Shown here piece by piece: positions 2,406-54,822 of a stretch of DNA of 64,000 bases. The position numbers and the translations under genes were made by a program. The DNA is from Macrostomum lignano (Eukaryota): assembly GCA_002269645.1 (NCBI GenBank), contig NIVC01000882.1:124001-188000 (forward strand). Direction: 5' to 3'. Under the pieces are notes generated by a model, which saw only the letters and a list, made by a program, of their open reading frames with translations, was not told where the DNA came from and ran no database searches. Position 1 is the first letter of the stretch. Every line of letters starts with the position of its first letter.

Positions 2406-15424
<13,019 letters not shown>

Positions 15425-25501: not shown

Positions 25502-28500
25502 ATGGATGAAGTACCCTACCTAGTGGTAGGGACTGAAGTGAGTGCAAAGTACAGAGGTGCATTCTGTGAAGCCAAAGTGAAGCGAATTGATGAAAAGAAG
25601 GTGCAATGCAAGGTAAAACGCTTTTCTTTTGTAGCATTTTCTCATTCTCATTCCGGTTTTTAAACATTCTATGACATTTTTTCTTCACTTTTTCAACATG
25701 CTTACTAGTAGTAGCATAATTAATAAAATCAAATTAATGATCCACCGCTCAGGTGTACATGAAGTCCACCCTGACCAGCTCTGTGGTCAGTCTAGACCAA
25801 ATTGTTGCCGGTTCAGTTCGCGTCGGCGGCTCCGTCACCGTCCGGTTGAAAGAGTCCAACGAGCCGGCCAGCGCCGAGGTGCAGAAGGTGCTGGACCAGA
25901 GCACCTACACCGTAGTGTTTAACGACGGCGACCAGCGTACGCTCAAGCGAACCCAGCTGGTGCTGAAAGGCGCCAGGCACTTTCAAGAGGACGAATCATT
26001 GGACCGGCTGCCCCTCACTCATCCTGAGCACTTCGGCACTCCGGTTGGCGCCAAGTTGAGCGCTAAAAAGCGCCGACGCCGTGGTCGCCGCAACGACGAC
26101 GATGGCGAGGAGGAGGAGGACGACGACGACGATGATGATGACGAAGAAGATGACGACAACGACGGCGAGACCTCTTCGTCCGTCGACGCCGCCAAAAACG
26201 GTCAAGCGTCGCCGCCTAGGACGCGAAAATCCGCTGTCGGCTCTTCGTCAACGACGTCGTCGGCTGCGGCGGCGGCGGCGGTTGCTGCTGCTGCGGCGGC
26301 AGCGGCGACTCCGACTAATCGAGTCGGCCGGCCGCCGAGCCTCATCGACAAGCTGATCGGCCGGGTGATGATCGCGCAGCAGGGCGAGCAGCGGCGCCCC
26401 TGCCCTGTGCTGGTCTGCCTGCCGTCTGCTAATCCTGATCTGCCGGCCAGCCGGAAGTCCCTGCTAGTGCGCAGCTTCCGGGATAATAAATTCAGTCTGG
26501 CTGTTAAGAAAGATTTGAAACCGTTCACTCGCGAGAGGGCGATTAAATCCGATGATAAGGCGTTAAAAGCCGCTTTTGAGAAGGCGCTGCAGTGGGTGAG
26601 TACTCTGTTCACTGTTGGGACACTGGTTTCCGATCTTCTACTGCTTGCTTCGAACTAATCCCGAATCTTCAGATATTCCTCACTGATCCCAAATCCTCAG
26701 ATTCATTCCTCACTTATCCCATATCATCAGATTCATTCCTCACTTATCCCAAATCCTCAGATTCATTCCTCACTTATCCCAAATCCTCAGATTCATTCCT
26801 CACTTATCCCAAATCCTCAGATTCATTCCTCACTTATCCCAAATCCTCAGATTCATTCCTCACTTATCCCAAATCCTCAGATTCATTCCTCACTTATCCC
26901 AAATCCTCAGATTCATTCCTCACTTATCCCAAATCCTCAGATTCATTCCTCACTTATCCCAAATCCTCAGATTCATTCCTCACTTATCCCAAATCCTCAG
27001 ATTCATTCCTCACTTATCCCAAATCCTCAGATTCATTCCTCACTTATCCCAAATCCTCAGATTCATTCCTCACTTATCCCAAATCCTCAGATTCATTCCT
27101 CACTTATCCCAAATCCTCAGATTCATTCCTCACTTATCCCAAATCCTCAGATTCATTCCTCACTTATCCCAAATCCTCAGATTCATTCCTCACTTATCTC
27201 AAATGCGGCGTGTATTAGTATAGTTTTGTAACAAACTCAAACTACGTTACTGTTAGTAGAAAAAGAGGAGTATTTTTGTCAAATTATAATATACAGTTGG
27301 AGACTCGCGAGCTGCCCTACAACTGGTCCCGCTCCGACCTGATTGGCGAAGAGTCCGACTCCTCTGGCGAAGAATCCGAAGCTAGCAGCGTTGACGATCC
27401 CATCGAGCAGGAGGCTCAAGACCACTGGATTGCGCAACTGTACGGCTTTATGGACGATCGCAGCACGCCTATAGGCAAAACGCCGGCAATTGGTAATAAA
27501 GATTTGAATCTGTTCCGGCTGTACCACCTGGTGAAGCGATTCGGCGGCTACAATCGGGTTACTAGCCAGCTGAAGTGGCGCATTGTGCACAGCAAGCTGG
27601 GTTTGCCAGCTACCAGTTCCACTACTAAGCTCAAATCCGCTTATCAACGCTACCTGCTACCGTTTGAGGAGTTCGACAAGAAGCTCGGCTCTTCGTTCAC
27701 CACCGGCATTGGCGGCGGCCTGCGCGGTCGATCATCAATGTCGGCATCAGCGTCGGGCTCCGCGGCTGCATCCGCTGGCGCCTCTGCCGGTTCAGCGTCT
27801 GGCGCCGGCGCCGCCTCGTCCGGTATGGCATCGCAGCACCTGGCTGGCGCGCCGGGCTCCTCCAGCGGCAGCAGCGGCCGCAACTTCTTGTCCGCCCGCG
27901 AGAAGCGCCAGTCCGGCCTGACTCCGGTGAAACGGCCGCGAGTTCAAGCCGCCGCTGCTAAGGCTAATAAGGAGGCCAAAGCTGCTAAGGAGGCTGGGAA
28001 AGACAAGGATGCCGCGTCGGTGTCTGCTGAATCGAACTCTACCGTGGCTTCCTCGTCGACTGCCGCCGCTACCGCCACTGCCAATCCTGCAGCTGCCGAC
28101 TGCGCGTCATCCACTTCAACAGCAACTGCCGCCGGCCTACTGGATGACCAAGCTCCGCCTAGTCTGTCCAGGTAGTGCTAGTAGCTTTTTAATACATTTC
28201 TGAACTATATGGTATCTGTTGCATTAGCGACATCTTCGATATTTTAGAATATACCCCCAGTGAATATACTTGAAAATATCCGCCTCTAAACTACCGTCAC
28301 ATATTCAACAGAATAGGCCTTTACTTATCTTTAAAAAATCTCCGAGAATCGCCCTCAAAGTCCTGAGCATCGCCTTCAAATCAGAGAATCAGCCTCTTTA
28401 AATCTCAGAGCATCAGCCTCAAGATCTTCTTAGAGAATCGCCCTCAAATATTTTCAGAGAGTTGTCATCAAATCTCAGAGAACGCCCTCAAATCTCTTCA

Positions 28501-31500
28501 GAGAATTGCCCTCAGATCTCAGAGAATCGCCCTCAAATCTCAGAGCATCAGCCTCAAATCTCCTTAGAAAATCGCCCTCAAATATTTTCTGAGAATCGCC
28601 CTCAGATCTCCTCAGAGAATCGCCCTCAAATCTCCTCAGAGAATCGCCCTCAGATCTCAGAGAATCGCCCTCAGATCACCTCAGAAAATCGCCCTCAAAT
28701 CTCCTCAGATAATCGCCCTCAGATCTCAGAGAATCGCCCTCAGATCTCCTCAGCGAATCGCCATCAAATCTCCTCAGAGTATCGCCCTCAAATATTTTCA
28801 GAGAATCGCTCTCAAATATTTTCCGAGAATCGCTCTCAAATCTCGGAGAATCGCCCTCAAATATCCTCAGAGAAACGCATTCATGGCTAAAATTTATCCT
28901 GAATAACCAACCCCCCAGGTCCAGCAGCGTGTTCGAACGTGTCGAAGCGCCATCAAACGCCTCGGATGTCGCCGCCGCTGCCAACGCAGCCAACAAACTT
29001 GCCGATGCTGTTGAAAGTAAGGACAACGACGATGAAGGCAACTCGTCGGCTGGCAGCGGCGCAGGCGACGCCTACCAAGTAGACGACAAGGTGCGGGTCC
29101 GCTACGGCGAGCCCGGCCGCTACAAAGTCTACGACGGTAGAATTGTAAAGAGATCCTGGCGCGCCAATCGGGTCAGCTATCACGTGCACTATTTCGGCTG
29201 GAATCAACGCTACGACGAGATTGTGACGCCCGATCGGATTCTCGGTCGCTGCCACCGCGGCCACGCTGTTGGCAGGCTCAACCACGGCCAGCCGCTGTCT
29301 TCGCTGCCGCCGCCGCCACCGCCGCCGCCGCCGCTTGCCGCCTCGGCTTCGAAGGCGAAATCAACGTCGAAATCGCCAGCCAGACTGCGGTCGGAGAGCG
29401 AGTCGCTGAGCAGTCCCAGCCCTGTGCAGGCGGATGTGCAGAAGGCCAGGCGAAGAAAGGTTGGTTTTGCTAGATGTATTGTTTTACGAGCTAATTTACT
29501 CAATTATAAGACTAAAAAGTTGATGCTTTAAAAAACGGTACAACCGTATCAGAAATTGGAACTTAGCTTTGGATTTCAGACATTTGAGTGTGTGAGAAAA
29601 TGTGACAAGAAACCTTTTTTTTAGACCCTAAAACTACAATCTAGTGCCCCCCCTTCGGGGCGCCGAATAAGCAAGGGACGAAAATTATTAATGTGAATCC
29701 TTTAAAATGAAAGCACAATGCTCACAATGGCTATAAAGTAAATTTTCTGCTTGGCTTTAGCAAAAAGCGTATTTCTGCATTTGCTTTGCCAACAAGATTT
29801 TTCATTAGTTTCAATCTTACTACTTGTTGGCTTGCTTTACTCTGCATAGCTGGTCGGAGGCATTCACGGAGCATGTAAATTTTATGCATTATTACTAATG
29901 AGCATGTAGAAACAGTTATAACCCTCCTCCTTTTGCAACCGGGCTTGGGCCCGGCTTTGGCGGAGTACAAGAGACTGACTATCTGGGGTTTGCAAAGGCT
30001 GCTTCAAACCCCCCTCTGGCAGCATTTTTGAAATTGATAACAACAACAACAACAAAATAGGCAGCCCTGCATTCAAGGTCACAGGCTAGGCGGGTCAGAT
30101 GGCGCGCCGCAGAGCTTGAGAGCGCACAAAGTCCGCCCCGTTGGCAGTGTCGGGCGCTCCAGCGTTGAATCGAAGGCATTCCACGCATCGACGGGTTGCC
30201 TGAACGGGCCCTGCAAGGTCAGTAGCCCTCGGCACGGATCACGTGGCCCACCAGTTGAAGTCGCAGCCGGCGCAGGATGATGGACGGGCGCTGCAGCTGG
30301 AAAGTAAAGCAGATTACTGTAGCCGCCTTCACTGTTTGACCGCGATAGAACATTTGCACCATCACAAAAAAAGAATATCTATGTCCATCAGCTACTGAAC
30401 TTAAACTTTCAGCGACTGTGATCGGCCTAAATGATTTCTATCTAGGCTTGGACACGCCAGTTTGCCCCTATAGCCAAATAAAGCTTCAATCTTGACATGT
30501 GATCGCTGTAGTTGATGTCCCGGATGAAATTGACCGCGCATTCTTTAAACGTAAACCACCGCTTGGCTTGGACAGAATCGTCGTTTTCATCATCAGAGTC
30601 GAATTAAGCACAGTAAAGCTTGAGCAAAAGAAGACGTTTCTTTAACAACTTGTCAACCACTACGAGTGTGTGTTAATTATTACTACTAGTAGGCTAACAT
30701 GTACTCGTAGCTACTTAATCGAACGTTCCTCTATTGAAATATATCGGTCTTCCAAATTGACTTTCCCAACGCCAAGCAGGTGTCGCACTCCTACGTTCAA
30801 CAGCACGGCCCGAATTCGTCGCCCACAAGCTGCTCCTCGGCCGACGGTCGGGCATCGGCGGCGGCAGCGGCCGCGGCGAACACAACAGCGGCTCAGACAG
30901 CCGCCCCCGACTCTGCCGCCGTCAATCTTGACATTTTATCTTCGCCGGCGCGCCAGACGTCCAACGCTGGCGACGCCGACGACGACTGGCAGAGCGGTAA
31001 AACGTCGGCCGCCGTGATGGACGAAGAAGATGACGTTGAAGACGACGACGATGAACGATGCGGAGCCGCCTCCGAGACAGCCTCGGCGACAGTTGCCTCC
31101 GCTGCCGCCGCTCGTGCCGACGCCGCGGAAAGCAGCGACGGCGGCAAAAGCTCCCTAGCCGTCAGCAGCGTCGGCGGGCGTCGTCACCGTAACGATTCCG
31201 GCTCTCGCATCGACGAAGCCGATGACGACGGCGACGTTGAGGATGAAGTTGAAGAGGAGGACGACGACGACGGCAAGTCCCGGGCGAATGGCGCCAGCGC
31301 CGCCGCTGCCGCCGGCCCCGCCAATCGTCGGAGGCCTGGGCGACGCGGACGCGCAAAAAATCAACATCAGCAGCAGCAGCGTCCGTCGTCGGCGGTGCCG
31401 CCTTCGCCGACGCCGTCGTCAGTTGCTGGCGTCGGGCAGCAGCAGCAGCCGGACGACGATGAGGAAGCTGACGACGACGGCGAAGACGAGGCAGCTTCGG

Positions 31501-31958
31501 TCACCACCGATGATCGAGCGGCTTCTGCTGCGCCTGCTGCTGCTACTGCACAGTCAACTGTGGCCTCCACCCCGACGCCCGGCTCAGCCGGTGGTCGCCC
31601 GGCTCCGGGGTCCAAGCGACGCGCTCGTCGCAGCGTCGGCTCCTCCTTGTCGAACTCAACCGTCGCCGCATCGGCCGGACAAACGCCCGGTCGCCGTCAG
31701 CCGGACAGGCCGAAGTATGTCCGGCCAGCCGATCAGCCGTTTGTGAGCAAATACGGCAGCTTCATGCCGCCAGACTTGGACGCTCACGATCACGCCACTC
31801 GTGTCCGGATGCTGTCCGAAGCGATCGCTCGGGTGCGCGAAGCCTGGCGCTCGGAGAAGCAGGCGCTATCGGAGCTGGACAAGCGCTACAGGCTGCAGAG
31901 GAAGCGGGCCAGGCTCGAGTCCGAGCGAGCGGCGGGTGCCGGCGGTCAGGCCAATTAG
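25502..31958 (+). CDS. ARID4: ARID4A/B (RBBP1/hat-trick)-like chromatin protein: Tudor, RBB1NT-like, ARID, chromobarrel and C-terminal coiled region, 5 coding exons, ~1182 aa
   Basis: join(25502..25612,25753..26595,27297..28171,28919..29459,30780..31958), 3549 nt, GT-AG and in phase. N-terminus [23 protein letters not shown] is typical of ARID4. ARID: [41 protein letters not shown]...W...[15 protein letters not shown]. Chromobarrel: [15 protein letters not shown]-terminus: [29 protein letters not shown]. Confidence 0.93.
26660..27200. repeat. 30-bp minisatellite, ~18 almost perfect copies, ARID4 intron 2
   Basis: TTCCTCACTTATCCCAAATCCTCAGATTCA. Confidence 0.96.
28340..28872. repeat. Degenerate 21-24-bp minisatellite, ARID4 intron 3
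   Basis: CAGAGAATCGCCCTCAAATCTC(CT). Confidence 0.88.
30039..30300 (-). mobile_element. Short 3' fragment of a related RTE-like LINE in ARID4 intron 4
   Basis: The minus strand encodes [23 protein letters not shown], matching RPSDLLCRRRLQLAGHLIRAESY in the 53.9-kb copy, and ends in the same CTATTTT(GTT)n tail. Confidence 0.75.
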
Positions 31959-33646: not shown

Positions 33647-34318
33647 TTGCCGCAGCCGCGCTCCCAGCTACTCAAAGTGATCCTACTCGGAGACGGCGGC
33701 GTTGGCAAGTCGTCGTTAATGACTCGCTACGTGCAGCAGCGCTTCGATCCGCACCAGCATCACACCATCGGGGTGGAATTCCTAGTTAAAGAGGTCAGCC
33801 TGTCTGACGGGTCCCGGTACACCCTGCAGATCTGGGACACCGCCGGCCAGGAGAGATTCCGATCGCTGCGCACCCCGTTCTACCGCGGCGCCGACGCGTG
33901 CATGCTGGTGTACAGCCTGGAGGATTCGAAATCGTTTGCTAATTTAAACATCTGGCGTCAGGAGTTCTTTCATTATTCCGGCGTGGAATCAGGCGAATTT
34001 CCATTTCTTCTAGTTGGCAATAAGAGCGACTCGGAGCGGGCCGCGGTGCCAGCTGATCAGGCCGAGGCCTGGGCTACAGAGCTGGATATGCCGCACTTAT
34101 TAACCTCGGCTAAGAGTGCTCACAATGTTGACCAAGCGTTTGAGCAGTTGACTAGTCTATGGGCTAAGCGTCAACTGATTGGCTTAGCGCGCGGCGGATC
34201 CGCGGATCAGGATAATGATAATGAGGTTCGCGATGTGGGCACCGTGCGAATTAGGCGAGGCGGCGGCGAAAGTGCCGCTGGCAGTGTTGGCGGCTACCGT
34301 CGTCGGTGCTGTAATTGA
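33647..34318 (+). CDS. RAB9: Rab9-like small GTPase (single coding block; start codon unresolved)
   Basis: LLKVILLGDGGVGKSSLMTRYV, HTIGVEFL, QIWDTAGQERFRSLRTPFYRGAD (Rab9-type), LVGNKSD, TSAK, and a C-terminal CCN prenylation motif. There is no in-frame ATG between an upstream stop (33623) and the G1 box; the sequence reads ATTG at 33646-33649. Confidence 0.9.
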   Translation: MPQPRSQLLKVILLGDGGVGKSSLMTRYVQQRFDPHQHHTIGVEFLVKEVSLSDGSRYTLQIWDTAGQERFRSLRTPFYRGADACMLVYSLEDSKSFANLNIWRQEFFHYSGVESGEFPFLLVGNKSDSERAAVPADQAEAWATELDMPHLLTSAKSAHNVDQAFEQLTSLWAKRQLIGLARGGSADQDNDNEVRDVGTVRIRRGGGESAAGSVGGYRRRCCN

Positions 34319-37048: not shown

Positions 37049-37516
37049 ATTCTTGCTGCTCCTGTCCGTGTTGCAGAGGTCTTTCAGTTTCCCTCTCCTA
37101 GCCCTTTGCCCTCCACTCTGCCACAATGCTTGTAAAACTGTTGTCGCTATGCTATAGTTATACAAATATTGTACTTGTTTATTCGTTTCCTATCGGTGTT
37201 TGCAATAGATATTTTGCTACTACTTACATGTACTCTTTCCTGACCCAGCAGATCTAGTTGTTTTTCTATTACGCTGTTTCTCTATTAATCTATTTGAGCT
37301 CATTAGAATTTTTCTCTTGTAATTTTGATTTTTTATTTACACTAACCAGACTGTCAGATTTCCAATAAATTCTCAACAGAAATATCTGCTAATATTGATA
37401 GATTTTTTCACTTATTTATTAACAAACTGCTTGCGACTTCTATAGTTTCCTTACTACAAGCTAGCTGCTATTGATGGTGTCTAGATTAGCAATCCGCCCC
37501 ATCTCAGCTCAACAGC

Positions 37517-40500
37517 ATGATCAGCTCAATCGATGAAGCCAAATGTGTTAAACAAGAGAAGCCGTCTGAGACGGAAGAAGAAATTGATGAAGCGTCGTTT
37601 CACACGGCCAACTGCCAGCCTCCTGACAGCTCCTGCGACGGCGGCGGCGGATGGAGCCGGCTGAGCCTGCACGAGGATGAGGCTGGCGAGGAGAAGCTCA
37701 TCTATTCAGATGCTGAGGACAATGAAGAGGAGCTGGCTGCGGCTTCTGCTCGGAGGAAGCGGGCGGCGCTGCGGCCCACGGGTGAGACAGGCAGACAGAC
37801 AGACAGACAGACAGACAGACAGGCAGACAGACACTAAGACAGACAGACAGATAGGCAGGCAGACAGACAGGCAGACAGACAGACAGACAGGCAGACAGAC
37901 ACTAAGACAGACAGACAGATAGGCAGGCAGACACTAAGACAGACAGACAGACAGACAGACAGGCAGACAGACACTAAGACAAACAGACAGGCAGACAGAC
38001 ACTAAGACAGACAGACAGACAGACAGACAGGCAGACAGACACTAAGACAAACAGACAGACAGACAGACGACAGACAGTCAGATAGATAAATAGAAGATAG
38101 CGAGAAAGAACGAGCGAAGCGAGCTCTTTCGAGCTTGCTTGCCGCAGCCAGTCAAGCTGAAAGCACGCACACAAGATCACCGGAAACGATTAAGGCAGCT
38201 GGAAAGCCAATGGGCGCGGTAAGCGCTTTTATCCAGAGGAACTACCTGCTGGAACCAGCCATGCCGAACGAAAATCAGACTACTCAAGTAGTGCAAAAGA
38301 GTACGTGCAACTACCGAGAAATCTAATTATCAGTGCAAAGACAGAAAAGACACTAAGACAGACAGACAGGCAGACAGACACTAAGACAGACAGACGACAG
38401 ACAGTCAGATAGATAGATAGATAGATAGATAGACGGACGGACGGACAGACAGACAGACAGATAGATAGATGGACGGACGGACAGGCGGACAGACAGACAG
38501 ATATATAGATGGACGGACAGACAGACAGACAGATAGATGGACGGACAGACAAACAGGAGCAGAACGGATAGGCATGAACACTTAACTTTCGCTATTCTTA
38601 CCGAAGTCTTGCCCTTGCATCACGGCCCTCGCATACCCCAATACAATGACTTAAATATTCGTCCCTTTGCAGAAAATGGCGCACCCCCAGCCGGTGTCGA
38701 GCCGGCGCCAAAAAAGAAGCGCTCCCGCGCCTGGGGCCTGACGAAACCGGCCGTTGTGCCCGTTGTCATCACCGCTAGCGTTATCAATGTAAATCGAAAG
38801 AATAATATACTCCTACTTTCCTACTGTAATCGGCTAGCATAGTAGCAAGTAGAGTGTTTGGACTCATAAAATTATTGCATCTATGTAATTGTATTTCTAG
38901 GAAATGCTGCCGAATCAGACAGAGCCGCCGGCGACTGACTACAAAGACTCGCCGCCCGTCGTCGATTCCATCGACGTCGACGTCGCCAACAAAGACGAAG
39001 GCGAAGCCGCATCGGAGCTTGAGGACGGCGAAGTGTCGCCTACCAATAACAACAGTAATAGCAATCACAATAACTCTATGACTAGCCAGAAGAAATGGTT
39101 GCCCACTGTACTCGCCGAATCACGTGATCAAACGGACAGACCGAAAGATCAGTTGGGCACTCAGCCTGCCACCGCTTCTGTTGATGCTGAACAGTCGCTA
39201 GGCCGACTGAGTCAATTTCGTAGGACCGTCACTCGGCCGTGCATTTTCTGGTGCCTGGCGAAGCCTGCGGATCTCTCAGAAAAATTGAAGAAGGATGTGA
39301 GAATGTTTAGTCTCTAATGTGTACATGATCTCATGAGCTATGACTAACTGGATTCTTGTATGACCTCATCATCTATGACTGACTGGATTCTTATATGACC
39401 TCATCAGCTATGACTGACTGGATTCTTGTATGACCTCATGAGCTATGATCAACTGGATTCTTGTATGAGCTCATCAGCTATGACTGACTGGATTCTTGTA
39501 TGACCTCATCATCTATGACTGACTGGATTCTTGTATGACCTCATCAGCTATGATCAACTGGATTCTTGTATGAGCTCATCAGCTATGACTGACTGGATTC
39601 TTGTATGACCTCATCATCTATGACTGACTGGATTCTTGTATGAGCTCATCAGCTATGACTGACTGGATTCTTGTATGACCTCATCAGCTATGATCAACTG
39701 GATTCTTGTATGAGCTCATCATCTATGACTGACTGGATTCTTGTATGACCTCATCATCTATGACTGACTGGATTCTTGTATGACCTCATCAGCTATGATC
39801 AACTGGATTCTTGTATGAGCTCATCAGCTATGACTGACTGGATTCTTGTATGACCTCATCATCTATGACTGACTGGATTCTTGTATGAGCTCATCAGCTA
39901 TGACTGACTGGATTCTTGTATGACCTCATCAGCTATGATCAACTGGATTCTTGTATGAGCTCATCATCTATGACTGACTGGATTCTTGTATGACCTCATC
40001 ATCTATGACTGACTGGATTCTTGTATGACCTCATCAGCTATGATCAACTGGATTCTTGTATGAGCTCATCAGCTATGACTGACTGGATTCTTGTATGACC
40101 TCATCAGCTATGACTGACTGGATTCTTGTATGACCTCATCAGCTATGATCAACTGGATTCTTGTATGAGGTCATCAGCTATGACAGACTGGATTCTTGCA
40201 TGACCTCATCAGCTATGATCAACTGGATTCTTGTATGACCTCATCATCTATGACAGACTGGATTCTTGCATGACCTCATCAGCTATGATCAACTGGATTC
40301 TTGTATGACCTCATCAGCTATGACTGAGCCCAGATTCTCCATAAGCCGTACAAATTCAGCCATCCGCCCCATCCTGGCACCGCAGCTGGCGGCTCCGCTT
40401 GCCCCGCCGCCGCCGCCGGACCCCTACGAGTCGGTCTTCGACGTGGCCGCCCTGGAAGCCGCCGCTGGCGTCGAGCAGCTCCGACGCGACCGTCGCCGGC

Positions 40501-43500
40501 TGCACCCGAACTCGCGCCCGTTCCCGCCGGACTTCGAGGCAACCGGCGGCCGGCTGCCGCTGCCACTCGACCATTCCTCAGGCGTCGACATTGCCGACAA
40601 TGGTCGGAGACGCCGACAACAGGCTCCGGCAGTGCTGCATCATTTTCCGCGCTGTATGAAGCCGTTCGAAGCGGATGAGTTGCATCAAGAATTGAGCAGT
40701 AGCAATTGCATGCCGAGGGCTGCATCCGAGGATGATGAGGCTGCGGTGAAGCTGAACTGGCTGGACGACAGCAGCCGCTGGCCGGACGCTCTGGACAAGT
40801 TGCGCCGACAGCTGGCCGCCCTGTTGAAGGTGCCGTTCGCTCGAGCCGCTGTTGCTAGGCTGGAAAGACCGTCTGACTGCACCGACTGGTGGTGAGTTAG
40901 AGGTAGAGTTTGATGTGATTTCTGGTACAGTTAGAGGGAGACTTTCATGTCTCCCTGGCAGGAAATGTTTCACAGGGGTCCAGTAGAGTGTGTAGGATTT
41001 GAGTAGGGTGTCTGATAGAGTTGTAGCCTAGTGGTCAGAGCCTTGGTCTCACGACTTTGGAAGTCGGGGGTTCGATTCCCGGTCCCACTCGAAACAATTT
41101 GTGTCCTTGAGCAAGACACTTAACTTTGCATTGCTTCAGTTCAGCCAGCTGTAAAATGGGTGCCAGCATTAGCTGGGGTAATTGAGGCTGTGTGTGGCGA
41201 TGGCGACCCCCCCCCCAGTCCTTGGACTGAGCAGCCGTACCCAGCCTTCAGATGCGCCACGCAATAGCTGCGGCTGAGCTGTCGGTTGCACATCTGGCCC
41301 AATTGGGGCAGGTGTAATCAATCATTATTTTTATTGCTGGTAGATTAGAGCGGACAGTTGAATAGGGCGTTTGGTTTGGCAGTCTCTAAAAGTTGGGTAT
41401 AGTGTATGGTAGAGTCTCGTGGAGTTGAATTGGTTGTCTGGTAGAGTGGCGAGTTGGTTGTCTGGTAGAGTGGCGAGTTGGTTGTCTGGTAGAGTGGCGA
41501 GTTTGATGTCTGGTAGAGTGGCGAGTTGGTTAGTTACCCGTACTCCTACCGCACGGTGTACTCGCGCTCCACCGCAGGCACCAGTCGGCAACATCAAAGG
41601 ACAGCGGCGATGCCGGCAGCAGCCCCGCGACCCCACTGGCCGCCCTGGTGTTCGTCGGCGGCCCGCCCAGGCCGGTGGAATTTCGCAGTCGCCAGCGTCA
41701 GAGTCGCGGGCAGCAGCGGAGGCTGCACCTGGCGGCGACGCGGCACGGCGGCCTGCTGGTGGCCGAAGGCTCGGCCGTCAGCGACTGGGCCGTCCGGCTG
41801 CCCGCCTTCGCTGCTGACGGGGACTCGCGTGCTGCTGCTGCTGATCAGGCAGCCCAAGCACTGTTTATGCTGCTTTTTGTGCGCTCAGAGGAGCAGGTGA
41901 GTGAGCTGGCTGATTGACAGCTCGAATCAATCATTTGGCTGTCTGTCTGTTTTGTGTTACTGATGCTGTCTGCTTTGTGTTACTGATGCTGTCTGTTTTG
42001 TGTTACTGATGCTGTCTGTCTGTTTTGTGTTACTGATGCTGTCTGTTTTGTGTTACTGATGCTGTCTGCTTTGTGTTACTGATGCTGTCTGTTTTGTGTT
42101 ACTGATGCTGTCTGTCTGTTTTGTGTTACTGATGCTGTCTGCTTTGTGTTACTGATGCTGTCTGTCTGTTTTGTGTTACTGATGCTGTCTGTTTTGTGTT
42201 ACTGATGCTGTCTGTTTTGTGTTACTGATGCTGTCTGCTTTGTGTTACTGATGCTGTCTGCTTTGTGTTACTGATGCTGTCTGTCTGTTTTGTGTTACTG
42301 ATGCTGTCTGTCTGTTTTGTGTTACTGATGCTGTCTGTCTGTTTTGTGTTACTGATGCTGTCTGTCTGTTTTGTGTTACTGATGCTGTCTGTCTGTTTTG
42401 TGTTACTGATGCTGTCTGCTTTGTGTTACTGATGCTGTCTGTCTGTTTTGTGTTACTGATGCTGTCTGTCTGTTTTGTGTTACTGATGCTGTCTGTTTTG
42501 TGTTACTGATGCTGTCTGTCTGTTTTGTGTTACTGATGCTGTCTGTTTTGTGTTACTGATGCTGTCTGTCTGTTTTGTGTTACTGATGCTGTCTGTCTGT
42601 TTTGTGTTACTGATGCTGTCTGCTTTGTGTTACTGATGCTGTCTGTCTGTTTTGTGTTACTGATGCTGTCTGCTTTGTGTTACTGATGCTGTCTGCTTTG
42701 TGTTACTGATGCTGTCTGCTTTGTGTTACTGATGCTGTCTGCTTTGTGTTACTGATGCTGTCTGCTTTGTGTTACTGATGCTGTCTGCTTTGTGTTACTG
42801 ATGCTGTCTGCTTTGTGTTACTGATGCTGTCTGCTTTGTGTTACTGATGCTGTCTGCTTTGTGTTACTGATGCTGTCTGCTTTGTGTTACTGATGCTGTC
42901 TGCTTTGTGTTACTGAGGCTATCTGTCTGTTTTCTGTTACTGATGCTGTTCTTTTAATTAAAATAATTTCATTTTTAGTTAGTGAGTGACCTTTTTAGTT
43001 AGTGAGTAATAGTAGATTTCACGCCCCTGGAAATCTAGGCACGACATTCGCTAGGATTTCCCCGCGGAATTTTTTATAAACTTCTCTCTGTTATCTATCT
43101 GGTTGCTAGGTCATTAATTTGTCTCTACCAGCTGACTTTGTGCTTATTTTATAATGCGCTTTTCTGCACAGTGCACTCCCTGCCCTATCAGGGGGTCACT
43201 TTCACATTTGAGTAAACAAAAACATTTATGTACAGCTGAGAATCTCACTGCACTTTTCCTGGTCACCTGTGCGGCTGGGCGGCTAGCTTATACTCTGTTA
43301 CTTAGTTTGATTGTGCCAGTCTGCGCCTGTGTCTACTGTCCTCTCCCCTTTCTCTCCCTTCCTCTCTCCCCTTTCTCTCCCTTCCTCTCTCCCCTTTCTC
43401 TCCCTTCCTCTCTCCCCTTTCTCTCCCTTCCTCTCTCCCCTTTCTCTCCCTTCCTCTCTCCCCTTTCTCTCCCTTCCTCTCTCCCCTTTCTCTCCCTTCC

Positions 43501-44209
43501 TCTCTCCCCTTTCTCTCCCTTCCTCTCTCCCCTTTCTCTCCCTTCCTCTCTCCCCTTTCTCTCCCTTCCTCTCTCCCCTTTCTCCCCCCTTTCTCTCCCT
43601 TCCTCTCTCCCCTTTCTCCCTCCCCTTTCTCTCCCTTCCTCTCTCCCCTTTCTCCCCCCTTTCTCTCCCTTCCTCTCTCCCCTTTCTCCCTCCCCTTTCT
43701 CTCCCTTTCTCTCTCCCCTTTCTCTCCCTTCCTCTCTCCCCTTTCTCTCCCTTCCTCTCTCCCCTTTCTCTCCCTTCCTCTCTCCCCTTTCTCCCCCCTT
43801 TCTCTCCCTTCCTCTCTCCCCTTTCTCTCCCTTTCTCCCCCTTTCTCTCCCTTCCCGTCTCCTCTTTCTCTCCCTTCCTCTCTCCCCTTTCTCTCCCTTT
43901 CTCCCTCCCCCTTTCTCTCCCTTTCTCTCTCCCCTTTCTCTCCCTTTCTCCCTCCCCCTTTCTCTCCCTTCCTCTCTCCCCTTTCTCTCCCTTTCTCCCT
44001 CCCCCTTTCTCTCCCTTCCTCTCTCCCCTTTCTCTCCCTTCCTCTCTCCCCTTTCTCTCCCTTTCTCCCTCCCCCTTTCTCTCCCTTCCTCTACCCCTTT
44101 CTTCCCTTCCTTATTTATCCCCGGTACCTTAATCCTCCCATACGCTTCCAGTCTTCAACCTCATCTTAATTTTCTGTTTCATCTTTTCGTTCAATATACT
44201 CGTATTATA

Positions 44210-44262
<53 letters not shown>

Positions 44263-44361
44263 GGCTATTATTCCACAAAAATACCGCTTAAAAGAGAAAT
44301 AAATCATTTTTCACTTTCTCCCCCTGCTTCAATTATTTTGCAGAATGAGAGTCGAGTTTAA
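37517..44361 (+). CDS. Divergent ALKBH2/3-fold (2OG-Fe(II) dioxygenase-like) protein with a long acidic/low-complexity N-terminus; catalytic ligands apparently absent; 7 exons, ~608-628 aa
   Basis: join(37517..37781,38094..38300,38673..38788,38901..39296,40386..40891,41578..41896,44344..44361); an alternative junction 39304/40334 is also in frame. All junctions are GT-AG with compatible phases. Segments VLHHFPRCMKPFEADELHQEL, WPDALDKLRRQLAALLKVPFARAAVARLERPSDCTDW, LAALVFVGGPPRPVEFRS and HGGLLVAEGSAVSDWAVRLP are collinear with recalled ALKBH3 segments. An NLS-like PAPKKKRSR is present. The short last exon is the least certain. Confidence 0.72.
37786..38551. repeat. (GACA)n/(GATA)n microsatellites in introns 1 and 2 of the AlkB-like gene (37786-38090, 38340-38551)
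   Basis: Direct inspection; they flank exon 38094-38300. Confidence 0.9.
39318..40326. repeat. 35-bp minisatellite filling intron 4 of the AlkB-like gene
   Basis: TATGACTGACTGGATTCTTGTATGACCTCATCAGC, ~29 copies. Confidence 0.94.
41017..41335 (+). mobile_element. tRNA-derived CORE-type SINE, full-length copy
   Basis: A box TAGCCTAGTGG and B box GGTTCGATTCC, followed by GTGTCCTTGAGCAAGACACTTAAC...CAGCTGTAAAATGGG, which resembles the MIR CORE. AT-rich tail. Homologous copies at 49700-50013 and 12727-12915. Confidence 0.82.
41445..41530. repeat. 24-bp tandem repeat, ~4 copies
   Basis: GAGTTGGTTGTCTGGTAGAGTGGC. Confidence 0.85.
41938..42950. repeat. 23/27-bp minisatellite
   Basis: TGTCTG(TCTG)TTTTGTGTTACTGATGC. 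Confidence 0.94.
43338..44110. repeat. ~770-bp polypyrimidine minisatellite (~23-bp unit); (ATT)n follows at 44210-44261
   Basis: CCCTTTCTCTCCCTTCCTCTCTC; the + strand is essentially only C/T. Confidence 0.95.
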
Positions 44362-49069: not shown

Positions 49070-50378
49070 ATGGCCGATCCGCCAGACAAAACCAACAGTT
49101 ACAATAGCTTCATTCCAGACTCTACTGGGTAAGTTTGCAAGCTAATAATTTATTAATCATAAAATATTGCTATTTACGTTATCATATTCTGATGCTTTCA
49201 AACTGTCCTTGTTGCACTACAGCGCAATGGTACTCGACGACGAGATGTCTCAGCAAGTCACGCTCAACGTATCCATGCAGCAGTGCTTAGCCCAGGCCAA
49301 CTCGGAGGGGCGCCTGATTTCTGGGTTTAAAAACGTGTTCACCTTTCTGGAGAACAAGTTAGTTGCGTATCCATGCATGTTTGAATATTTAATTTTCACC
49401 GAAGCAAATAGAAATCCTAAACTCATTACTATAAGTACTCGTATAACTAATACTTCAGAAACTCGAAGTTTTAATTGTCCCACATTTTTCTTTGGATTAC
49501 AGCAGCAGCGAACTAATCCTGTTCTGCATCCTGCCAGAGAATCTGTGGAACGATTCTCGCCGCAAGGCAGCCTTCAGACTGGTCGCGTCGTTCTGCGACG
49601 AGCGCCGGGTGCGAATGATCAAGGTGCGAATTTATTGTTTTATAGTTCGTTTAGGGCACTAGAGAACCTCTTCAGTAGCATTCAAGTATTTATATTAGTA
49701 TAATTAATAGTATTAATTGATTGCTCTAACCTGCCCTAATTGGGCCAGATGTGCAACCGACAGCTCAGCCGCAGCTATTGCGCGGCGCATCTGAAGGCTG
49801 CGTACGGCTGTTCAGTCCAAGGACTGGGGGGTCGCCACACACAGCCTCAATTACCCCAGCTAATGCTGGCACCCATTTTACAGCTGGGTGAGCTGAAGCA
49901 ATGCAGAGTTAAGTGTCTTGCTCAAGGACACAGATTGTTTCAGTAGGATCGGGAATCAAACCCCCGACTTCCAAGTCGTGAGACCGACTCTTTACCCACT
50001 GGGCTACAACTCCTATATATAGTATATTATTATACTATTATGTAAAACCATAAGAGAACTCACACCCAAGAGAGTGTACACTCGCGCTCTCTTCATCAGT
50101 GTCAGCGCTGATGAAGTTGGAATTCGCTAACCCCCCCCCCCTGTCACGAAAACTCTGCTCAGGTTGACGACGACCAGTTGGTTAGAAAAATCATTGAGAG
50201 GACCAGCAGCTCCCAACTGAGCGCCGGCAAGGCGGACCTGTCCTACGAGTGCGTCCTGGTGCTGCGCCGCTGGCCAGATCAGCCCTGCTGCGACGCCGAA
50301 CTGTTGCGTCATCACGCCAGGTTCCCCGGCCACGATTTCGACAACCTGCCTCTGGTCCGGCTGCTGGAGTCGTCCTGA
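49070..50378 (+). CDS. GADD45: GADD45-like protein (L7Ae/Gadd45 fold), 4 exons, ~176 aa
   Basis: join(49070..49128,49223..49357,49503..49623,50163..50378), 531 nt, GT-AG and in phase. SMQQCLAQANSEGRLISGFKNVFTFLEN-NSSELILFCILPE...AFRLVASFCDERRVRMIK-VDD...YECVLV...LPLVRL follows the Gadd45 pattern (ALEEVL..A......GVYE...LCLL...LIQAFCCENDINILRV...LHCVLV...VPVINL). It is only fragmentarily seen in the ORF track. Confidence 0.8.
49700..50013 (-). mobile_element. tRNA-derived CORE-type SINE, full-length copy in GADD45 intron 3
   Basis: The reverse complement aligns end to end with 41017-41335 (5' GGAGTTGTAGCCCAGTGG; 3' CATCTGGCCCAATT.GGGCAGG). Confidence 0.82.
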
Positions 50379-52345: not shown

Positions 52346-53535
52346 ATGGACTTCCCGTTGGTGCCAGCAAGTCAGTCGGGATTCCTCATCATGCTGGCCG
52401 CCGATGACAGCAACAATTTCACGGCCTGCTGCCAGCAGACGGTAAGCTTTCTGATTTATAAAAAATATTTCTAAGAGACTTTACTGTCTTTTCACATTCT
52501 TTCTTGGAATAACCTTTCTCGTGATTCTCCAGAATCCAAAGGAATCCCTTTAAGGAAATTCTTTTGGGGGGATTCTCTTTTAGGAAAATCCTTTTGGGGG
52601 ATTCTCATTTAGGGAAATCCTTTTGGGGGATTCCCCTTTAGGGAAATCTTCTTGGGGATTCTCCTTTAGGGAGATCCTGTTTGGGATTCTCCTTTAGGGA
52701 AATCCTGTGAGATTCTCCTTAAAGAAAATCAACTGCAGGGATACTCTTTTAGGGGAATCCTTAATAGGGTTCTATTCTGAAGTAATTTATTTTAGTTTTT
52801 CTTTTGTAAAAATCTAAGACGGGATTCAATCTACAGTTAGGAAGATTATTTTTGAACTAGCAAGGGAATTAGTTTTTGCAGATAGATAACTGGACCTTGC
52901 AGTCACAACAGGCCGACCCGCTGCCTCCATTGGCCGAAATGGGCGGCAGCAGCTGCATTCCGTACGCCACCGAGGAGCTGGAGAGCTCGGAGCCGCGTCT
53001 TGATCTCGATTTTATTATCGACCACTTGCCGACGTCGACGGAGCCACTGGCGACGCATCAGCCAGCATCAACTGTCGACTCAACCGGACTGCAGTGCATC
53101 CTGCACTACCTGCAGGGCGCTATCAGCGACTCGACGCCGGCGCCAACTCCGGCGCAGGCACCGACATTGCCAGCAAAAACGTCCGAGAGCGTGTCGAAAC
53201 GTGGACAACGACGACAGTCGATCGCTTCGACGACGACGGCCGTCGCCGCTCTGTACGCTGCACCAGGCGCCGTGCACGCTTGCCCGCTGAAGGGCTGCGA
53301 AAAGGCCTACAGCAAGAGCTCCCACCTGAAAGCTCACCTTCGAGCTCACACTGGGGAAAAGCCGTACAGATGCGACTGGCCCGGCTGTGACTGGCGATTC
53401 TCCAGGTCGGACGAGCTGACCAGGCACCGTCTGAAGCACACCGGCCTGAGGCCCTACCGCTGCCAGCTGTGCCAGCGGGCTTTCAGCCGCTCCGATCATC
53501 TGGCGCTGCATTTGCGGAAGCACAAGCAGATCTGA
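52346..53535 (+). CDS. KLF: Kruppel-like factor (3 C-terminal C2H2 fingers), KLF1/2/4-type N-terminal motif, 2 exons, ~249 aa
   Basis: join(52346..52441,52882..53535), phase 0. Fingers: [81 protein letters not shown]. Upstream LDLDFII motif. Confidence 0.92.
52530..52775. repeat. Degenerate tandem repeat of imperfect-palindrome units in the KLF intron
   Basis: GGGGATTCTCCTTTAGGGAAATCC variants. Confidence 0.75.
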
Positions 53536-53901: not shown

Positions 53902-54822
53902 AGGGAATGGTGCTTGACTGGGTGCTGCGGACTGCTCTTCCTACCGACGACGATGGCTTTCTGCTGCGGCGACGCGTGGGTCGACGTCAACCGGAGAAGC
54001 GGCTCAGCGTGCTTGGCTACGCCGACGACCTCGCCCTGCTGTCCTCGACCGTCGAGGGTGCCCAACGGCAGCTGGACAGGCTAGTTGCCGTTGCGGCGAG
54101 CGTCGGCCTGGTGGTCAACATGCAGAAGACCGTTGTGCTCTGCGTGCCGGACGACATCGAGGCTGCAATCTTCTGCCGAGGTGCTGACGGGCAGGCGACC
54201 GAGCTCCCGCGATGTCAGCAGTTCGTCTACCTCGGCGGTCTGGTTCCAGACGCTCGCGAGGACCTCCGACGCTGCTGCGGGCTTGCCTGGGCTGCCTTTC
54301 GTTCTGTGAGGGCAGTCCTGCAATCCGAGGCCCTACCGGACCGCCAGAGGGCGGCGCTGTTCCAGGCGGTAATCGAGACCGTCTTGCTCTACAACGCCGA
54401 GACCTGGACGCTGACGGACTCACTCGAACAGCAAGTCGATGCGGCGCACGCTGGCCTGCTGCGCGCCGCCTTCAACATCGGCATCGAGCAAGTCAACAAC
54501 GCGGCACTCTATCGCCGCGCTGGCCTGCCACGTCCAAGCGATCTACTGTGCCGTCGGCGACTCCAGCTCGCAGGCCATCTCATCCGCGCCGAGTCGTACT
54601 GCCCACAGCCGGTGCAGGAGGTGCTGCTGCTCACGCTGCAGGCACCCTACCGGCGAGGTCAAGCGCGAGTCGGCGTTACGTCGACTGTCTGCTGGCTGAC
54701 GCCGGCGCCCCGGACACTGCCGGTGGCGCGGCCTTTGTTCGCGCCCAAGCCATGAAGCGCGCCCTGTGACGCTGACTTTTGCCATCCTGACAGCGTATTT
54801 TCTATTTTGTTGTTGTTGTTGT
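53902..54822 (+). mobile_element. 5'-truncated non-LTR retrotransposon (RTE-like LINE), C-terminal half of RT
   Basis: ORF 53907-54755 has LGYADDLALL, GLVVNMQKT, QFVYLGG, TVLLYNAETWTL and RRLQLAGHLIR, with a frameshift near the C-terminus. 3' tail CTATTTT(GTT)n. 12-bp TSD TGATTTTAACCT at 53890-53901 and 54823-54834. Confidence 0.9.

What the first reader, a model, noticed from the sequence alone, without database searches (positions are those of the whole stretch)
37517..44361. Apparent AlkB-family pseudoenzyme fused to a long acidic, NLS-bearing N-terminus
Seen: an intact 7-exon ORF whose last ~190 aa are collinear with ALKBH3 as I recall it. The matches are VLHHFPRCMKPFEADELHQEL ~ VCLYPGFVDVKEADWILEQL; WPDALDKLRRQLAALLKVPFARAAVARLERPSDCTDWWHQS ~ WHPVLRTLKNRIEENTGHTFNSLLCNLYRNEKDSVDWHSD; LAALVFVGGPPRPVEFRS ~ IASLSFGATRTFEMRK; HGGLLVAEGSAVSDWAVRLP ~ HGTLLIMEGATQADWQHRVP; LFMLLFV ~ RVNLTFR. 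Established: AlkB catalysis needs HxD...H for Fe(II), and NxY and RxxxxxR for 2OG. All of these appear lost here (no HxD, distal H to V, both Arg gone) while hydrophobic core positions are kept. The N-terminal ~400 aa carry PAPKKKRSR, an ELEDGEV motif and a conserved-looking block (QFRRTVTRPCIFWCLAKP...DPYESVFDVAALE) that I cannot assign. Inference: a non-catalytic reader/scaffold for methylated nucleic acid, possibly a lineage-specific undescribed family.
Basis: partly seen in the sequence, partly recalled or inferred. Interest (0 to 1): 0.7.

Follow-up and report, generated by a model that had tools for sequence, protein, structure and literature searches.

The report
Dead AlkB domain plus RSB motif
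A flatworm (Macrostomum lignano) gene encodes a nuclear-looking protein whose tail is a degenerate, almost certainly non-catalytic copy of the DNA/RNA demethylase ALKBH3, and whose middle carries a short motif that in Acinus and Pinin docks the splicing factors RNPS1 and SAP18; this domain pairing has not been described before but is so far seen in one species only.

Summary
Window 37517-44361 (+) is an intact, canonically spliced gene of Macrostomum lignano. It matches GenBank PAA75469 (BOX15_Mlig019945g2), a model built from RNA-seq. It has 6 coding exons, not 7, and encodes 539 aa.

- **AlkB resemblance:** it escapes Pfam, NCBIfam and a 1.84-billion-protein HMMER scan, but it is real. Against a diverse ALKBH3-like profile, hhalign gives 92% probability (P=6e-7, 154 collinear columns). 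No shuffle reached the real score (0/200 hhalign, 0/5000 HMMER).
- **Catalytic residues:** the Fe(II)/2OG residues are replaced: N179A, Y181L, D193K, H257V, R275M. No alternative splice restores HxD.
- **Selection:** four genomic copies all keep the ORF, with dN/dS about 0.2-0.35 (P=0.0009).
- **No orthologue** was found outside M. lignano.
[quoted passage not shown] It is the top PDB hit (4A8X). The only two Pfam hits are RSB_motif and Pinin, both below threshold. 0/5000 shuffles reached the real score.

Best reading: a lineage-restricted nuclear scaffold that docks RNPS1-SAP18 and carries a dead ALKBH3-derived domain. The proposed role as a reader of methylated nucleic acid is untested.

The parts
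37517..37781 (+). Coding exon 1 (aa 1-88 plus 1 nt). Acidic N-terminus (aa 1-80: pI 4.2) ending in the basic patch RRKRAALR (37751-37774). The AG at 37506-37507, just upstream, is a likely spliced-leader trans-splice acceptor.
   Evidence: ATG at 37517 and donor CGG|GTGAGA. Identical to PAA75469. UniRef fragment P0005 starts LNSM = CTCAACAGCATG, directly after that AG; the trans-splicing reading is an inference. pI.
38673..38788 (+). Coding exon 2. It holds the classical monopartite NLS-like PAPKKKRSR (38702-38728, aa 99-107).
   Evidence: Sequence read directly. The segment aa 81-130 has pI 11.0. NLS function is inferred from the K-K/R-x-K/R consensus.
38901..39296 (+). Coding exon 3: an acidic, Asn/Ser-rich stretch with ELEDGEV (39015-39035), then the RSB-like motif.
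   Evidence: Pfam finds nothing in aa 1-206.
39195..39296 (+). RSB-like (RNPS1-SAP18 binding) motif SLGRLSQFRRTVTRPCIFWCLAKPADLSEKLKKD (aa 226-259). Core FRRTVTRPCIFW lies at 39216-39251.
   Evidence: The top PDB hit is the Drosophila Acinus RSB peptide of the ASAP core complex, 4a8x_B: LFRKTKGTPCIYWLPLTPEAIAEK, E=0.52. The only Pfam hits on the 126-aa segment are PF16294 RSB_motif (E=0.045) and PF04696 Pinin_SDK_memA (E=0.071), both below their gathering scores. A custom Acinus-RSB HMM scores 12.8 bits, with 0/5000 shuffles reaching it. It is the best hit in the six-frame window: 13.8 bits against 6.0 for the next.
40386..40891 (+). Coding exon 4: a Pro/Ala/Arg-rich linker (aa 260-340) followed by the first half of the AlkB-like domain from 40629 (AVLHHFPRCMKPFEADELHQEL ... 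WPDALDKLRRQL..FARAAVARLERPSDCTDW).
   Evidence: Acceptor CCGCAG|CTG at 40386 as in the RNA-seq-based model P0001. hhalign and MAFFT alignments to ALKBH3 residues 88-190. N179 aligns to A416 and Y181 to L418.
40884..41602 (+). Degenerate HxD site, split by intron 4 (40892-41577, phase 2): D426-W-W-H429-Q-S-A-T-S-K435-D, against ALKBH3 D189-W-H191-S-D193-D.
   Evidence: D193 aligns to K435 in hhalign, HMMER, phmmer and MAFFT. H191 aligns to H429, W428 or T433. No H-x-D occurs in any frame of the intron, and there is no hidden AlkB-like exon.
41578..41896 (+). Coding exon 5: the second half of the AlkB-like domain (LAALVFVGGPPRPVEFRS; basic loop RQRQSRGQQRR; HGGLLVAEGSAVSDWAVRLP; Ala-rich insertion; LFMLLFV). 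Distal His to Val: V500 within DWAVR (41783-41797).
   Evidence: BLASTP against macaque ALKBH3 gives E=1e-4 for the HG..LL..EG..DW..R.P block. tblastn with many ALKBH3 relatives hits 41744-41830. H257 aligns to V500 and R275 to M525; R269 aligns with R512.
44344..44361 (+). Coding exon 6 (NESRV plus TAA stop).
   Evidence: Acceptor TTTTGCAG|AAT; stop at 44359-44361. Conserved in L001 and L002.

Best explanation
This is a real, transcribed gene of the flatworm Macrostomum lignano that is under purifying selection. It encodes a 539-aa modular protein.

**Modules.**
1. An acidic, probably disordered N-terminus with a PKKKR-type nuclear localisation signal.
2. A short RSB-type motif (FRRTVTRPCIFW plus flanking helix-prone segments). 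In Acinus and Pinin this motif bridges the RRM of RNPS1 and the ubiquitin-like domain of SAP18.
3. A C-terminal domain descended from an ALKBH3-like AlkB dioxygenase. It has lost the Fe(II) ligands (Asp of HxD to Lys, distal His to Val), the 2-oxoglutarate ligands (NxY to AxL, second Arg to Met) and most of the nucleotide-recognition lid.

**Proposed mechanism.** The protein enters the nucleus and uses the RSB motif to assemble an ASAP/PSAP-like ternary complex with RNPS1 and SAP18, on spliced mRNPs or chromatin. The dead AlkB fold serves as a non-enzymatic binding module, for nucleic acid or for a protein partner, and gives this third complex its specificity.

**Shown:** gene structure, expression-based model, copy number, purifying selection, AlkB homology, loss of catalytic residues, and a better-than-chance RSB-like motif.

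**Inferred:** nuclear localisation, RNPS1-SAP18 binding, and what the dead domain binds.
For: **Gene reality.**
- Identical to the RNA-seq-derived model PAA75469, with canonical splice sites.
- Four genomic copies keep intact ORFs: the window, L001, and two tandem copies in L002.
- Pairwise dN/dS is 0.21-0.35. There are 13 nonsynonymous against 15 synonymous changes; binomial P=0.0009 for the whole CDS and 0.012 for the C-terminal half.

**AlkB descent.**
- ALKBH3 is the only protein family, apart from one low-complexity hit, in a PDB-wide phmmer scan (E=0.78).
- hhalign against a diverse ALKBH3-like profile gives probability 92.2%, P=6e-7, with 154 collinear columns. The score rose from 29 to 51 when the profile was diversified, and no shuffle reached it.
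- HMMER gives 14.0 bits, with 0/5000 shuffles reaching it.
- An independent MAFFT global alignment is collinear.
- 18 of 48 strongly conserved family columns are kept.

**Loss of catalysis.**
- N179A, Y181L, D193K, H257V and R275M.
- These changes lie inside exons and are identical in all copies.
- No alternative exon or splice restores them.

**RSB motif.**. [quoted passage not shown] RSB biology comes from PMC5441173 and PMC7878923.
Against: - Curated libraries do not report an AlkB domain at any threshold tried (Pfam and NCBIfam).
- The RSB matches are below Pfam's gathering scores (14.4 against 27.1 bits). An unrelated DUF hit at E=0.023 on another sub-segment shows that such E-values can arise by chance.
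- The RSB flanks differ from the consensus (RTV instead of KTK, CLAK instead of LPLT), and one copy carries R234H in the core.
- AlphaFold2 without AlkB homologues in the alignment gave no fold (pLDDT 31.5). The confident-looking model (pLDDT 61.7) used an ALKBH3 alignment, so it is not independent.
- The intron at the HxD site is not shared with quail ALKBH3.
- No orthologues exist to test deeper conservation.
- There are no binding data of any kind.
Confidence: 0.55

Rival explanations
1. One reading: the dead AlkB domain is a reader of methylated or alkylated bases (m1A, m3C, m6A). It holds the flipped base without oxidising it, and that is the protein's main function.
For: AlkB descent and loss of catalysis are supported. 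Some substrate-side residues are kept: R131 as R370, and D189-W190 as D426-W427. A new basic loop, RSRQRQSRGQQRR, replaces the acidic ALKBH3 loop.
Against: The nucleotide-recognition lid is largely gone: W135, G137, Y141, Y143 and S144 are all replaced, the beta-hairpin region is about 20 residues shorter, and L177 becomes Ala. No assay has been done, and no characterised AlkB-family reader was found in the literature searches.
Confidence: 0.18
2. The AlkB resemblance is convergent or chance. The C-terminal half is an orphan, lineage-specific domain or a largely disordered region, and the protein is simply an RSB-bearing nuclear scaffold.
For: No Pfam or NCBIfam hit. No AlkB protein appeared in the 1.84-billion-representative scan. 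The PDB E-value is only 0.78. Single-family AF2 gave no fold. The intron is not shared with ALKBH3.
Against: The profile-profile P=6e-7 survives a correction for about 20,000 families. The score rose when the profile was diversified. 0/200 and 0/5000 shuffles reached the real scores. Five blocks are collinear in three different aligners. The vertebrate ALKBH3 profile itself finds only ALKBH2 and ALKBH3 chains in the PDB, plus two marginal N6-methyladenine demethylase chains (E=0.005-0.007). It misses E. coli AlkB, ALKBH5 and ALKBH8 at E<=0.01, so weak scores are normal in this family.
Confidence: 0.12
3. The RSB-like match is fortuitous. The N-terminal part is just an acidic disordered region with an NLS, and the protein has nothing to do with RNPS1-SAP18.
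For: All RSB scores are below curated thresholds. The core match is only 12 residues. An unrelated hit of comparable E-value occurred elsewhere in the protein. There is no Acinus RRM or SAP domain and no Pinin domain.
Against: Three different resources converge on the same 12-24 residues: the PDB peptide from the ASAP complex, the Acinus Pfam model and the Pinin Pfam model. 0/5000 shuffles reached the real score. It is a clear outlier in the six-frame window. The C-terminal helix PADLSEK resembles Drosophila PEAIAEK.
Confidence: 0.3
4. It is a decaying duplicate of an AlkB gene with no function, carried along as redundant copies in a recently duplicated genome.
For: Catalytic residues are lost. 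There is no orthologue outside the species. The DV1 genome is highly redundant (PMC5730564).
Against: All four copies keep a 539-540-codon ORF and all splice sites. dN/dS is 0.2-0.35, with P=0.0009 against neutrality. The gene is present in the RNA-seq-derived annotation. Divergence from ALKBH3 is far too deep for an unconstrained ORF to have stayed open.
Confidence: 0.05
5. It is still an active dioxygenase that uses non-canonical ligands or an alternative isoform.
For: His429 may correspond to H191. R512 may correspond to R269.
Against: D193K, H257V, N179A, Y181L and R275M leave at most one metal ligand and one 2OG contact. No H-x-D occurs in any frame of intron 4. The distal His position lies inside exon 5.
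Confidence: 0.03

Closest known systems
ALKBH3 (and ALKBH2) - AlkB-family Fe(II)/2-oxoglutarate dioxygenases that repair m1A/m3C in ssDNA and RNA (Pfam PF13532; PDB 2IUW, 8JNK)
   Same: The domain order of secondary-structure blocks is collinear over about 170 residues (aa 341-508 against human ALKBH3 88-265). Kept signature residues are EAD, PR, W..L..L, F, D..DW, G..R, HG.LL.EG..DW..R.P and the last-strand F.
   Different: The iron triad and most 2OG ligands are gone. The lid (PRLTAWYG..YTYS) is shortened and degenerate. A basic loop and an Ala-rich, length-polymorphic insertion are added. About 340 aa of unrelated N-terminal sequence are fused on. The domain is not recognised by PF13532.
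Acinus (ASAP complex) and Pinin (PSAP complex) - the two known RSB-motif proteins that bridge RNPS1 and SAP18 (PDB 4A8X; Pfam PF16294, PF04696)
   Same: The core F-R-[KR]-T-x-x-x-P-C-I-[YF]-W is followed by P-x-x-[IL]-x-E-K. It is embedded in disordered, charged sequence with an NLS. Acinus and Pinin likewise share only about 12-15 residues with each other (PMC7878923).
   Different: There is no SAP or RRM domain (Acinus) and no Pinin/SDK domain. The solvent-exposed K-T-K is R-T-V, and L-P-L-T is C-L-A-K. Scores are below the Pfam gathering thresholds. An AlkB-like domain lies downstream, which neither family has.
Pseudoenzymes in general (for example pseudokinases, or catalytically dead JmjC/2OG-oxygenase-fold proteins used as scaffolds)
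   Same: The enzyme fold is kept under purifying selection after loss of the cofactor ligands.
   Different: I found no characterised AlkB-family pseudoenzyme in two literature searches; that absence rests on limited searches and my own knowledge.

Membership tests
AlkB family (2OG-Fe(II) oxygenase, ALKBH2/3-like) | Detectable sequence homology to the AlkB double-stranded beta-helix domain | tested here: met
   hhalign against a 21-sequence ALKBH3-like profile: probability 92%, P=6e-7, 0/200 shuffles. HMMER: 14.0 bits, 0/5000 shuffles. Collinear MAFFT alignment. Caveat: the Pfam PF13532 and NCBIfam models give no hit.
AlkB family (2OG-Fe(II) oxygenase, ALKBH2/3-like) | Fe(II) facial triad H-x-D...H (ALKBH3 H191, D193, H257) | tested here: not met
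   D193 aligns to K435 and H257 to V500 in all alignments. H191 aligns to H429, W428 or T433 depending on the aligner. The residues are the same in all four copies. No splice variant restores the triad.
AlkB family (2OG-Fe(II) oxygenase, ALKBH2/3-like) | 2-oxoglutarate ligands N-x-Y and R-x5-R (ALKBH3 N179, Y181, R269, R275) | tested here: not met
   N179 aligns to A416, Y181 to L418 and R275 to M525. R269 may be kept as R512, but it is followed by a 7-residue Ala-rich insertion that breaks the spacing.
AlkB family (2OG-Fe(II) oxygenase, ALKBH2/3-like) | Nucleotide-recognition lid (PRLTAWYG...Y-x-Y-S, beta-hairpin) | tested here: not met
   Only P130-R131 are kept (P369-R370). W135, G137, Y141, Y143 and S144 are replaced, and the segment is about 20 residues shorter.
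AlkB family (2OG-Fe(II) oxygenase, ALKBH2/3-like) | Double-stranded beta-helix fold shown by an independent structure prediction | tested here: inconclusive
   AF2 on the three M. lignano copies alone: pLDDT 31.5. AF2 with ALKBH3 rows in the alignment: pLDDT 61.7, with Foldseek top hits ALKBH2/3 at TM 0.55-0.60. That result is circular.
AlkB family (2OG-Fe(II) oxygenase, ALKBH2/3-like) | Oxidative demethylase activity | not testable with these tools
   Needs a biochemical assay. The residue pattern predicts no activity.
RSB-motif proteins (Acinus / Pinin) | RSB core F-R-K-T-K-x-x-P-x-I-Y-W with flanking helical segments | tested here: met
   FRRTVTRPCIFW matches 8 of 12 core residues identically and 2 more conservatively. 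4a8x_B is the top PDB hit. The custom HMM gives 12.8 bits, 0/5000 shuffles. It is the best hit in the six-frame window.
RSB-motif proteins (Acinus / Pinin) | Score above Pfam gathering threshold for PF16294 or PF04696 | tested here: not met
   14.4 bits against 27.1 (E=0.045), and 13.6 bits against 25 (E=0.071).
RSB-motif proteins (Acinus / Pinin) | Family-specific domains (Acinus SAP plus RRM; Pinin N-terminal/SDK domain) | tested here: not met
   No RRM, SAP or Pinin N-terminal domain in Pfam scans at E<=10. The protein is therefore not an Acinus or Pinin orthologue, only a possible third carrier of the motif.
RSB-motif proteins (Acinus / Pinin) | Ternary complex with RNPS1 RRM and SAP18 UBL | not testable with these tools
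   Needs pull-down or co-IP assays, or complex structure prediction.

The most novel reading that the evidence does not exclude
Macrostomum has evolved a third RSB-type adaptor alongside Acinus and Pinin. It builds a lineage-specific 'xSAP' complex with RNPS1 and SAP18. Its catalytically dead ALKBH3-derived domain recognises alkylated or methylated, or simply single-stranded, RNA. This would couple base-modification status to splicing, EJC or NMD decisions without removing the mark. It would be the first AlkB-family pseudoenzyme 'reader'.
Probability: 0.12. Interest if true: 0.75.

Novelty: new variant of a known kind. Interest (0 to 1): 0.45.

Why it matters
AlkB-family proteins are studied as erasers of nucleic-acid methylation. 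A member kept under selection after losing its iron and 2-oxoglutarate ligands would show that the fold can be reused non-enzymatically, as has happened with kinases and JmjC proteins.

Only Acinus and Pinin are known to use the RSB motif to nucleate RNPS1-SAP18 complexes. A third carrier with a different effector domain would widen that system.

M. lignano has working transgenesis (PMC5730564), which would make the localisation and pull-down tests proposed here practical.

The limits are real. So far the gene is confined to one recently duplicated genome, and all functional statements are inferences.

Tried and rejected
1. **Alternative exon 3/4 joins.** My own first joins (acceptor 40329, or donor 39309 with acceptor 40360) are in frame, but the RNA-seq-based model uses the acceptor at 40386. 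I dropped them.
2. **Curated libraries.** Pfam on the full protein and on four C-terminal sub-segments, and NCBIfam, gave no AlkB hit. There was one chance-level DUF7595 hit.
3. **Orthologue search.** A full HMMER scan of 1.84 billion representatives and a word-indexed scan of 5.8 billion proteins returned only M. lignano copies and frameshifted older models (P0002, P0009-11), plus one repetitive false positive (P0012).
4. **AF2 on the shallow alignment.** pLDDT was 31.5, so I did not pass the model to Foldseek.
5. **Shared-intron test.** The quail ALKBH3 exon covers aa 154-223 without an intron at DW|H. This gives no support, but it is not evidence against either.
6. **Hidden exon or alternative splice restoring HxD.** None found.
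7. **tRNA or Rfam identity of the tRNA-like repeat in intron 4.** None found.
8. **Literature.** No paper mentions the gene identifiers, and I found no paper on AlkB pseudoenzymes.


Full report
**1. What is there**

The window is genomic DNA of the free-living flatworm Macrostomum lignano. The spliced ORF that starts at ATG 37517 and ends at TAA 44361 matches GenBank PAA75469.1 ('hypothetical protein BOX15_Mlig019945g2, partial'). My first trial model matched at 97%. The match is exact once exon 4 starts at 40386.

GenBank models of assembly Mlig_3_7 were derived from a genome-guided RNA-seq transcriptome with TransDecoder ORFs (PMC5730564).

The gene has six coding exons, not seven:

| Exon | Window coordinates |
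|---|---|
| 1 | 37517-37781 |
| 2 | 38673-38788 |
| 3 | 38901-39296 |
| 4 | 40386-40891 |
| 5 | 41578-41896 |
| 6 | 44344-44361 |

All introns have strong GT..AG sites. The introns are filled with tandem repeats. The product is 539 aa.

**2. Copies and selection**

The same gene occurs at least four times in the assembly:
- the window;
- scaffold NIVC01000808 (L001);
- scaffold NIVC01000158 (L002), which carries two tandem copies.

The flanks are collinear in all loci, with an ARID4-like gene and a Rab-type GTPase upstream. All four ORFs are intact.

Pairwise Nei-Gojobori dN/dS is 0.21-0.35 for the whole CDS and 0.14-0.34 for the C-terminal half. Across the copies I count 13 nonsynonymous and 15 synonymous changes, where neutrality predicts about 3:1. 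The binomial test gives P=0.0009 for the whole CDS and P=0.012 for the C-terminal half. The counts are small and gene conversion is possible. Even so, a decaying duplicate is unlikely.

**3. Is the C-terminus AlkB-like?**

Unbiased searches are nearly silent:
- Pfam and NCBIfam report no 2OG-oxygenase domain on the whole protein or on sub-segments.
- A full HMMER scan of 1.84 billion representative proteins finds only M. lignano copies, older frameshifted models of the same gene, and one repetitive false positive.
- A phmmer scan of the PDB lists ALKBH3 as the only protein family besides one low-complexity hit, but at E=0.78.

Targeted tests are clearer:

| Test | Result | Controls |
|---|---|---|
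| BLASTP vs macaque ALKBH3, block HGGLLVAEGSAVSDWAVRLP | E=1e-4 | - |
| hhalign vs 15 vertebrate ALKBH3 | score 29.3, P=0.002 | 0/300 shuffles, max 27.0 |
| hhalign vs 21-sequence diverse profile | score 50.9, probability 92.2%, P=6e-7, 154 columns (aa 341-508 vs human 88-265) | 0/200 shuffles, max 26.7 |
| HMMER with the diverse profile | 14.0 bits | 0/5000 shuffles, max 5.1; reversed sequence -1.9 |

I built the diverse profile by adding 14 bacterial and metatranscriptome ALKBH3-like sequences, translated from loci L004-L022. The rise in score on diversifying the profile is what true homology predicts.

A global MAFFT alignment independently gives the same collinear blocks at 22-28% identity.

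The vertebrate ALKBH3 profile itself finds only ALKBH2 and ALKBH3 chains in the PDB, plus two marginal N6-methyladenine demethylase chains (E=0.005-0.007). It misses E. coli AlkB, ALKBH5 and ALKBH8 at E<=0.01. Weak scores are therefore normal in this family.

I conclude, with about 80% confidence, that the domain descends from an ALKBH2/3-type AlkB domain.

Structure prediction added nothing independent. With only the M. lignano copies, AF2 gave pLDDT 31.5. With ALKBH3 rows in the alignment it gave a beta-rich model (pLDDT 61.7) that Foldseek matches to ALKBH2/3 at TM 0.55-0.60, which is circular. The intron at the HxD position is not shared with quail ALKBH3.

**4. Catalytic residues**

Of 48 family columns conserved at >=85% within the aligned span, 18 are identical in the flatworm protein.

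Kept residues are structural or substrate-side: L109, P130-R131, L158, F173, D186, D189-W190, S192, D194, P202, G210, R213, L239, G242, L244-L245 and W255.

Lost residues:
- N179 to A416 and Y181 to L418 (2OG ligands)
- D193 to K435 (Fe ligand)
- H257 to V500 (Fe ligand)
- R275 to M525

H191 aligns with H429 in the HMMER and phmmer alignments, with W428 in hhalign and with T433 in MAFFT. R269 aligns with R512 in MAFFT and tblastn, but a 7-residue Ala-rich insertion follows it, and that insertion varies in length between copies.

Most of the nucleotide-recognition lid is lost or deleted. No frame of intron 4 contains H-x-D, and no hidden AlkB-like exon exists in the window. V500 lies inside exon 5. 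All four copies share these residues.

By the established requirement of AlkB enzymes for the HxD...H triad and for 2OG coordination, the domain should be catalytically dead.

**5.

The segment SLGRLSQFRRTVTRPCIFWCLAKPADLSEKLKKD (aa 226-259, end of exon 3) matches the RSB (RNPS1-SAP18 binding) motif.

- Its best PDB hit is chain B of 4A8X, the Drosophila Acinus RSB peptide in the ASAP core complex. QFRRTVTRPCIFWCLAKPADLSEK aligns with LFRKTKGTPCIYWLPLTPEAIAEK at E=0.52.
- On a 126-aa segment, the only Pfam hits are PF16294 RSB_motif (E=0.045) and the RSB-bearing end of PF04696 Pinin_SDK_memA (E=0.071). Both are below their gathering scores.
- An HMM that I built from 100 distinct Acinus RSB exons scores the protein at 12.8 bits, with 0/5000 shuffles reaching that score (max 7.5).
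- In a six-frame translation of the whole window, exon 3 is the clear top hit: 13.8 bits against 6.0 for the next.

In Acinus and Pinin, which otherwise share no similarity, this motif forms a beta-hairpin with two short helices that bridges RNPS1 and SAP18. The resulting ASAP and PSAP complexes sit at the periphery of the exon junction complex (PMC5441173; PMC7878923).

The flatworm protein has no SAP, RRM or Pinin domain, so it is not an orthologue of either. At best it is a third carrier of the motif.

Caveats:
- All scores are sub-threshold.
- The exposed K-T-K is R-T-V.
- One copy carries R234H.
- An unrelated Pfam hit at E=0.023 on another segment shows what chance can produce.

I put the RSB reading at about 60%.

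**6. Mechanism proposed**

- **Nuclear import** through PAPKKKRSR. This is an inference from the classical NLS consensus; aa 81-130 have pI 11.
- **Docking of RNPS1-SAP18** through the RSB motif (inference).
- **A dead ALKBH3-derived fold as a binding module.** It carries a new basic loop, RSRQRQSRGQQRR, which hints at nucleic-acid contact (inference).

**7. Novelty and verdict**

The gene is annotated only as hypothetical. No paper mentions it, and I found no described AlkB-family pseudoenzyme.

The combination of an RSB motif with a dead AlkB domain is a new variant of known kinds. It is confined so far to one species with a recently duplicated genome, and there are no functional data.

Interest is moderate.

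No step had to be referred.

Noticed in passing
window 41015-41327 (intron 4 of the gene); also window 49714-50016 (-) and L001 23778-24080: A dispersed repeat of about 300 bp with a tRNA-like head (GTAGCCTAGTGGTCAGAGC...GGTTCGATTCCCGG), probably a tRNA-derived SINE. ARAGORN and Rfam do not call a tRNA there.
   Followed up: partly
L002 20275-26294 (scaffold NIVC01000158): A second, tandem copy of the whole gene lies about 10 kb downstream of the first in this scaffold. The window and L001 have only one copy. The tandem copy keeps an intact ORF as far as the locus extends.
   Followed up: partly
window 37506-37516: Transcript-derived protein fragments begin LNSM = CTCAACAGCATG, immediately after an AG. 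This suggests a spliced-leader trans-splice acceptor. The '.g2/.g3' gene names imply the gene is a downstream member of a polycistronic transcriptional unit with the upstream Rab-like gene.
   Followed up: no
window 33647-34318 (+): A single-exon Rab-type small GTPase gene lies 3.2 kb upstream (Pfam Ras/Roc/Arf on the homologous loci). It is in the same order in L001 and L002.
   Followed up: no
window 25753-31958 (+): Large exons of an ARID4/RBBP1-like chromatin protein (RBB1NT, ARID and chromo-like domains according to the Pfam list for the merged model on L002). It has long Ala/Ser/Asp-rich low-complexity tracts.
   Followed up: no
window 6331-7602 (-) and 13878-14711 (-): Exons of a MARK/Par-1-type Ser/Thr kinase. 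The 5' exon ORF runs in frame into a long PTHHPTHT-type tandem repeat, and the intron between the exons holds a repeat array of about 2 kb (10260-12444).
   Followed up: no
window 52876-53535 (+) and 53907-54755 (+): A KLF/Sp-type exon with three C2H2 zinc fingers, followed within 400 bp by a fragment of a non-LTR retrotransposon reverse transcriptase (YADD box).
   Followed up: no
window 37785-38556, 39325-40327, 41943-42949, 43341-44139: Every long intron of the gene is dominated by a different tandem array: (AGAC)n, then 35-bp, 23-bp and 23/46-bp units, each up to about 1 kb. Array lengths differ between the gene copies. This fits the reported 15% simple and tandem repeat content of this genome.
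   Followed up: partly
proteins P0002, P0009-P0011 (older M. lignano gene models): Public databases hold frameshifted or chimeric models of this gene from an earlier assembly. UniRef labels some of them misleadingly ('PHD-type domain-containing protein', 'SNF2_N domain-containing protein').
   Followed up: partly
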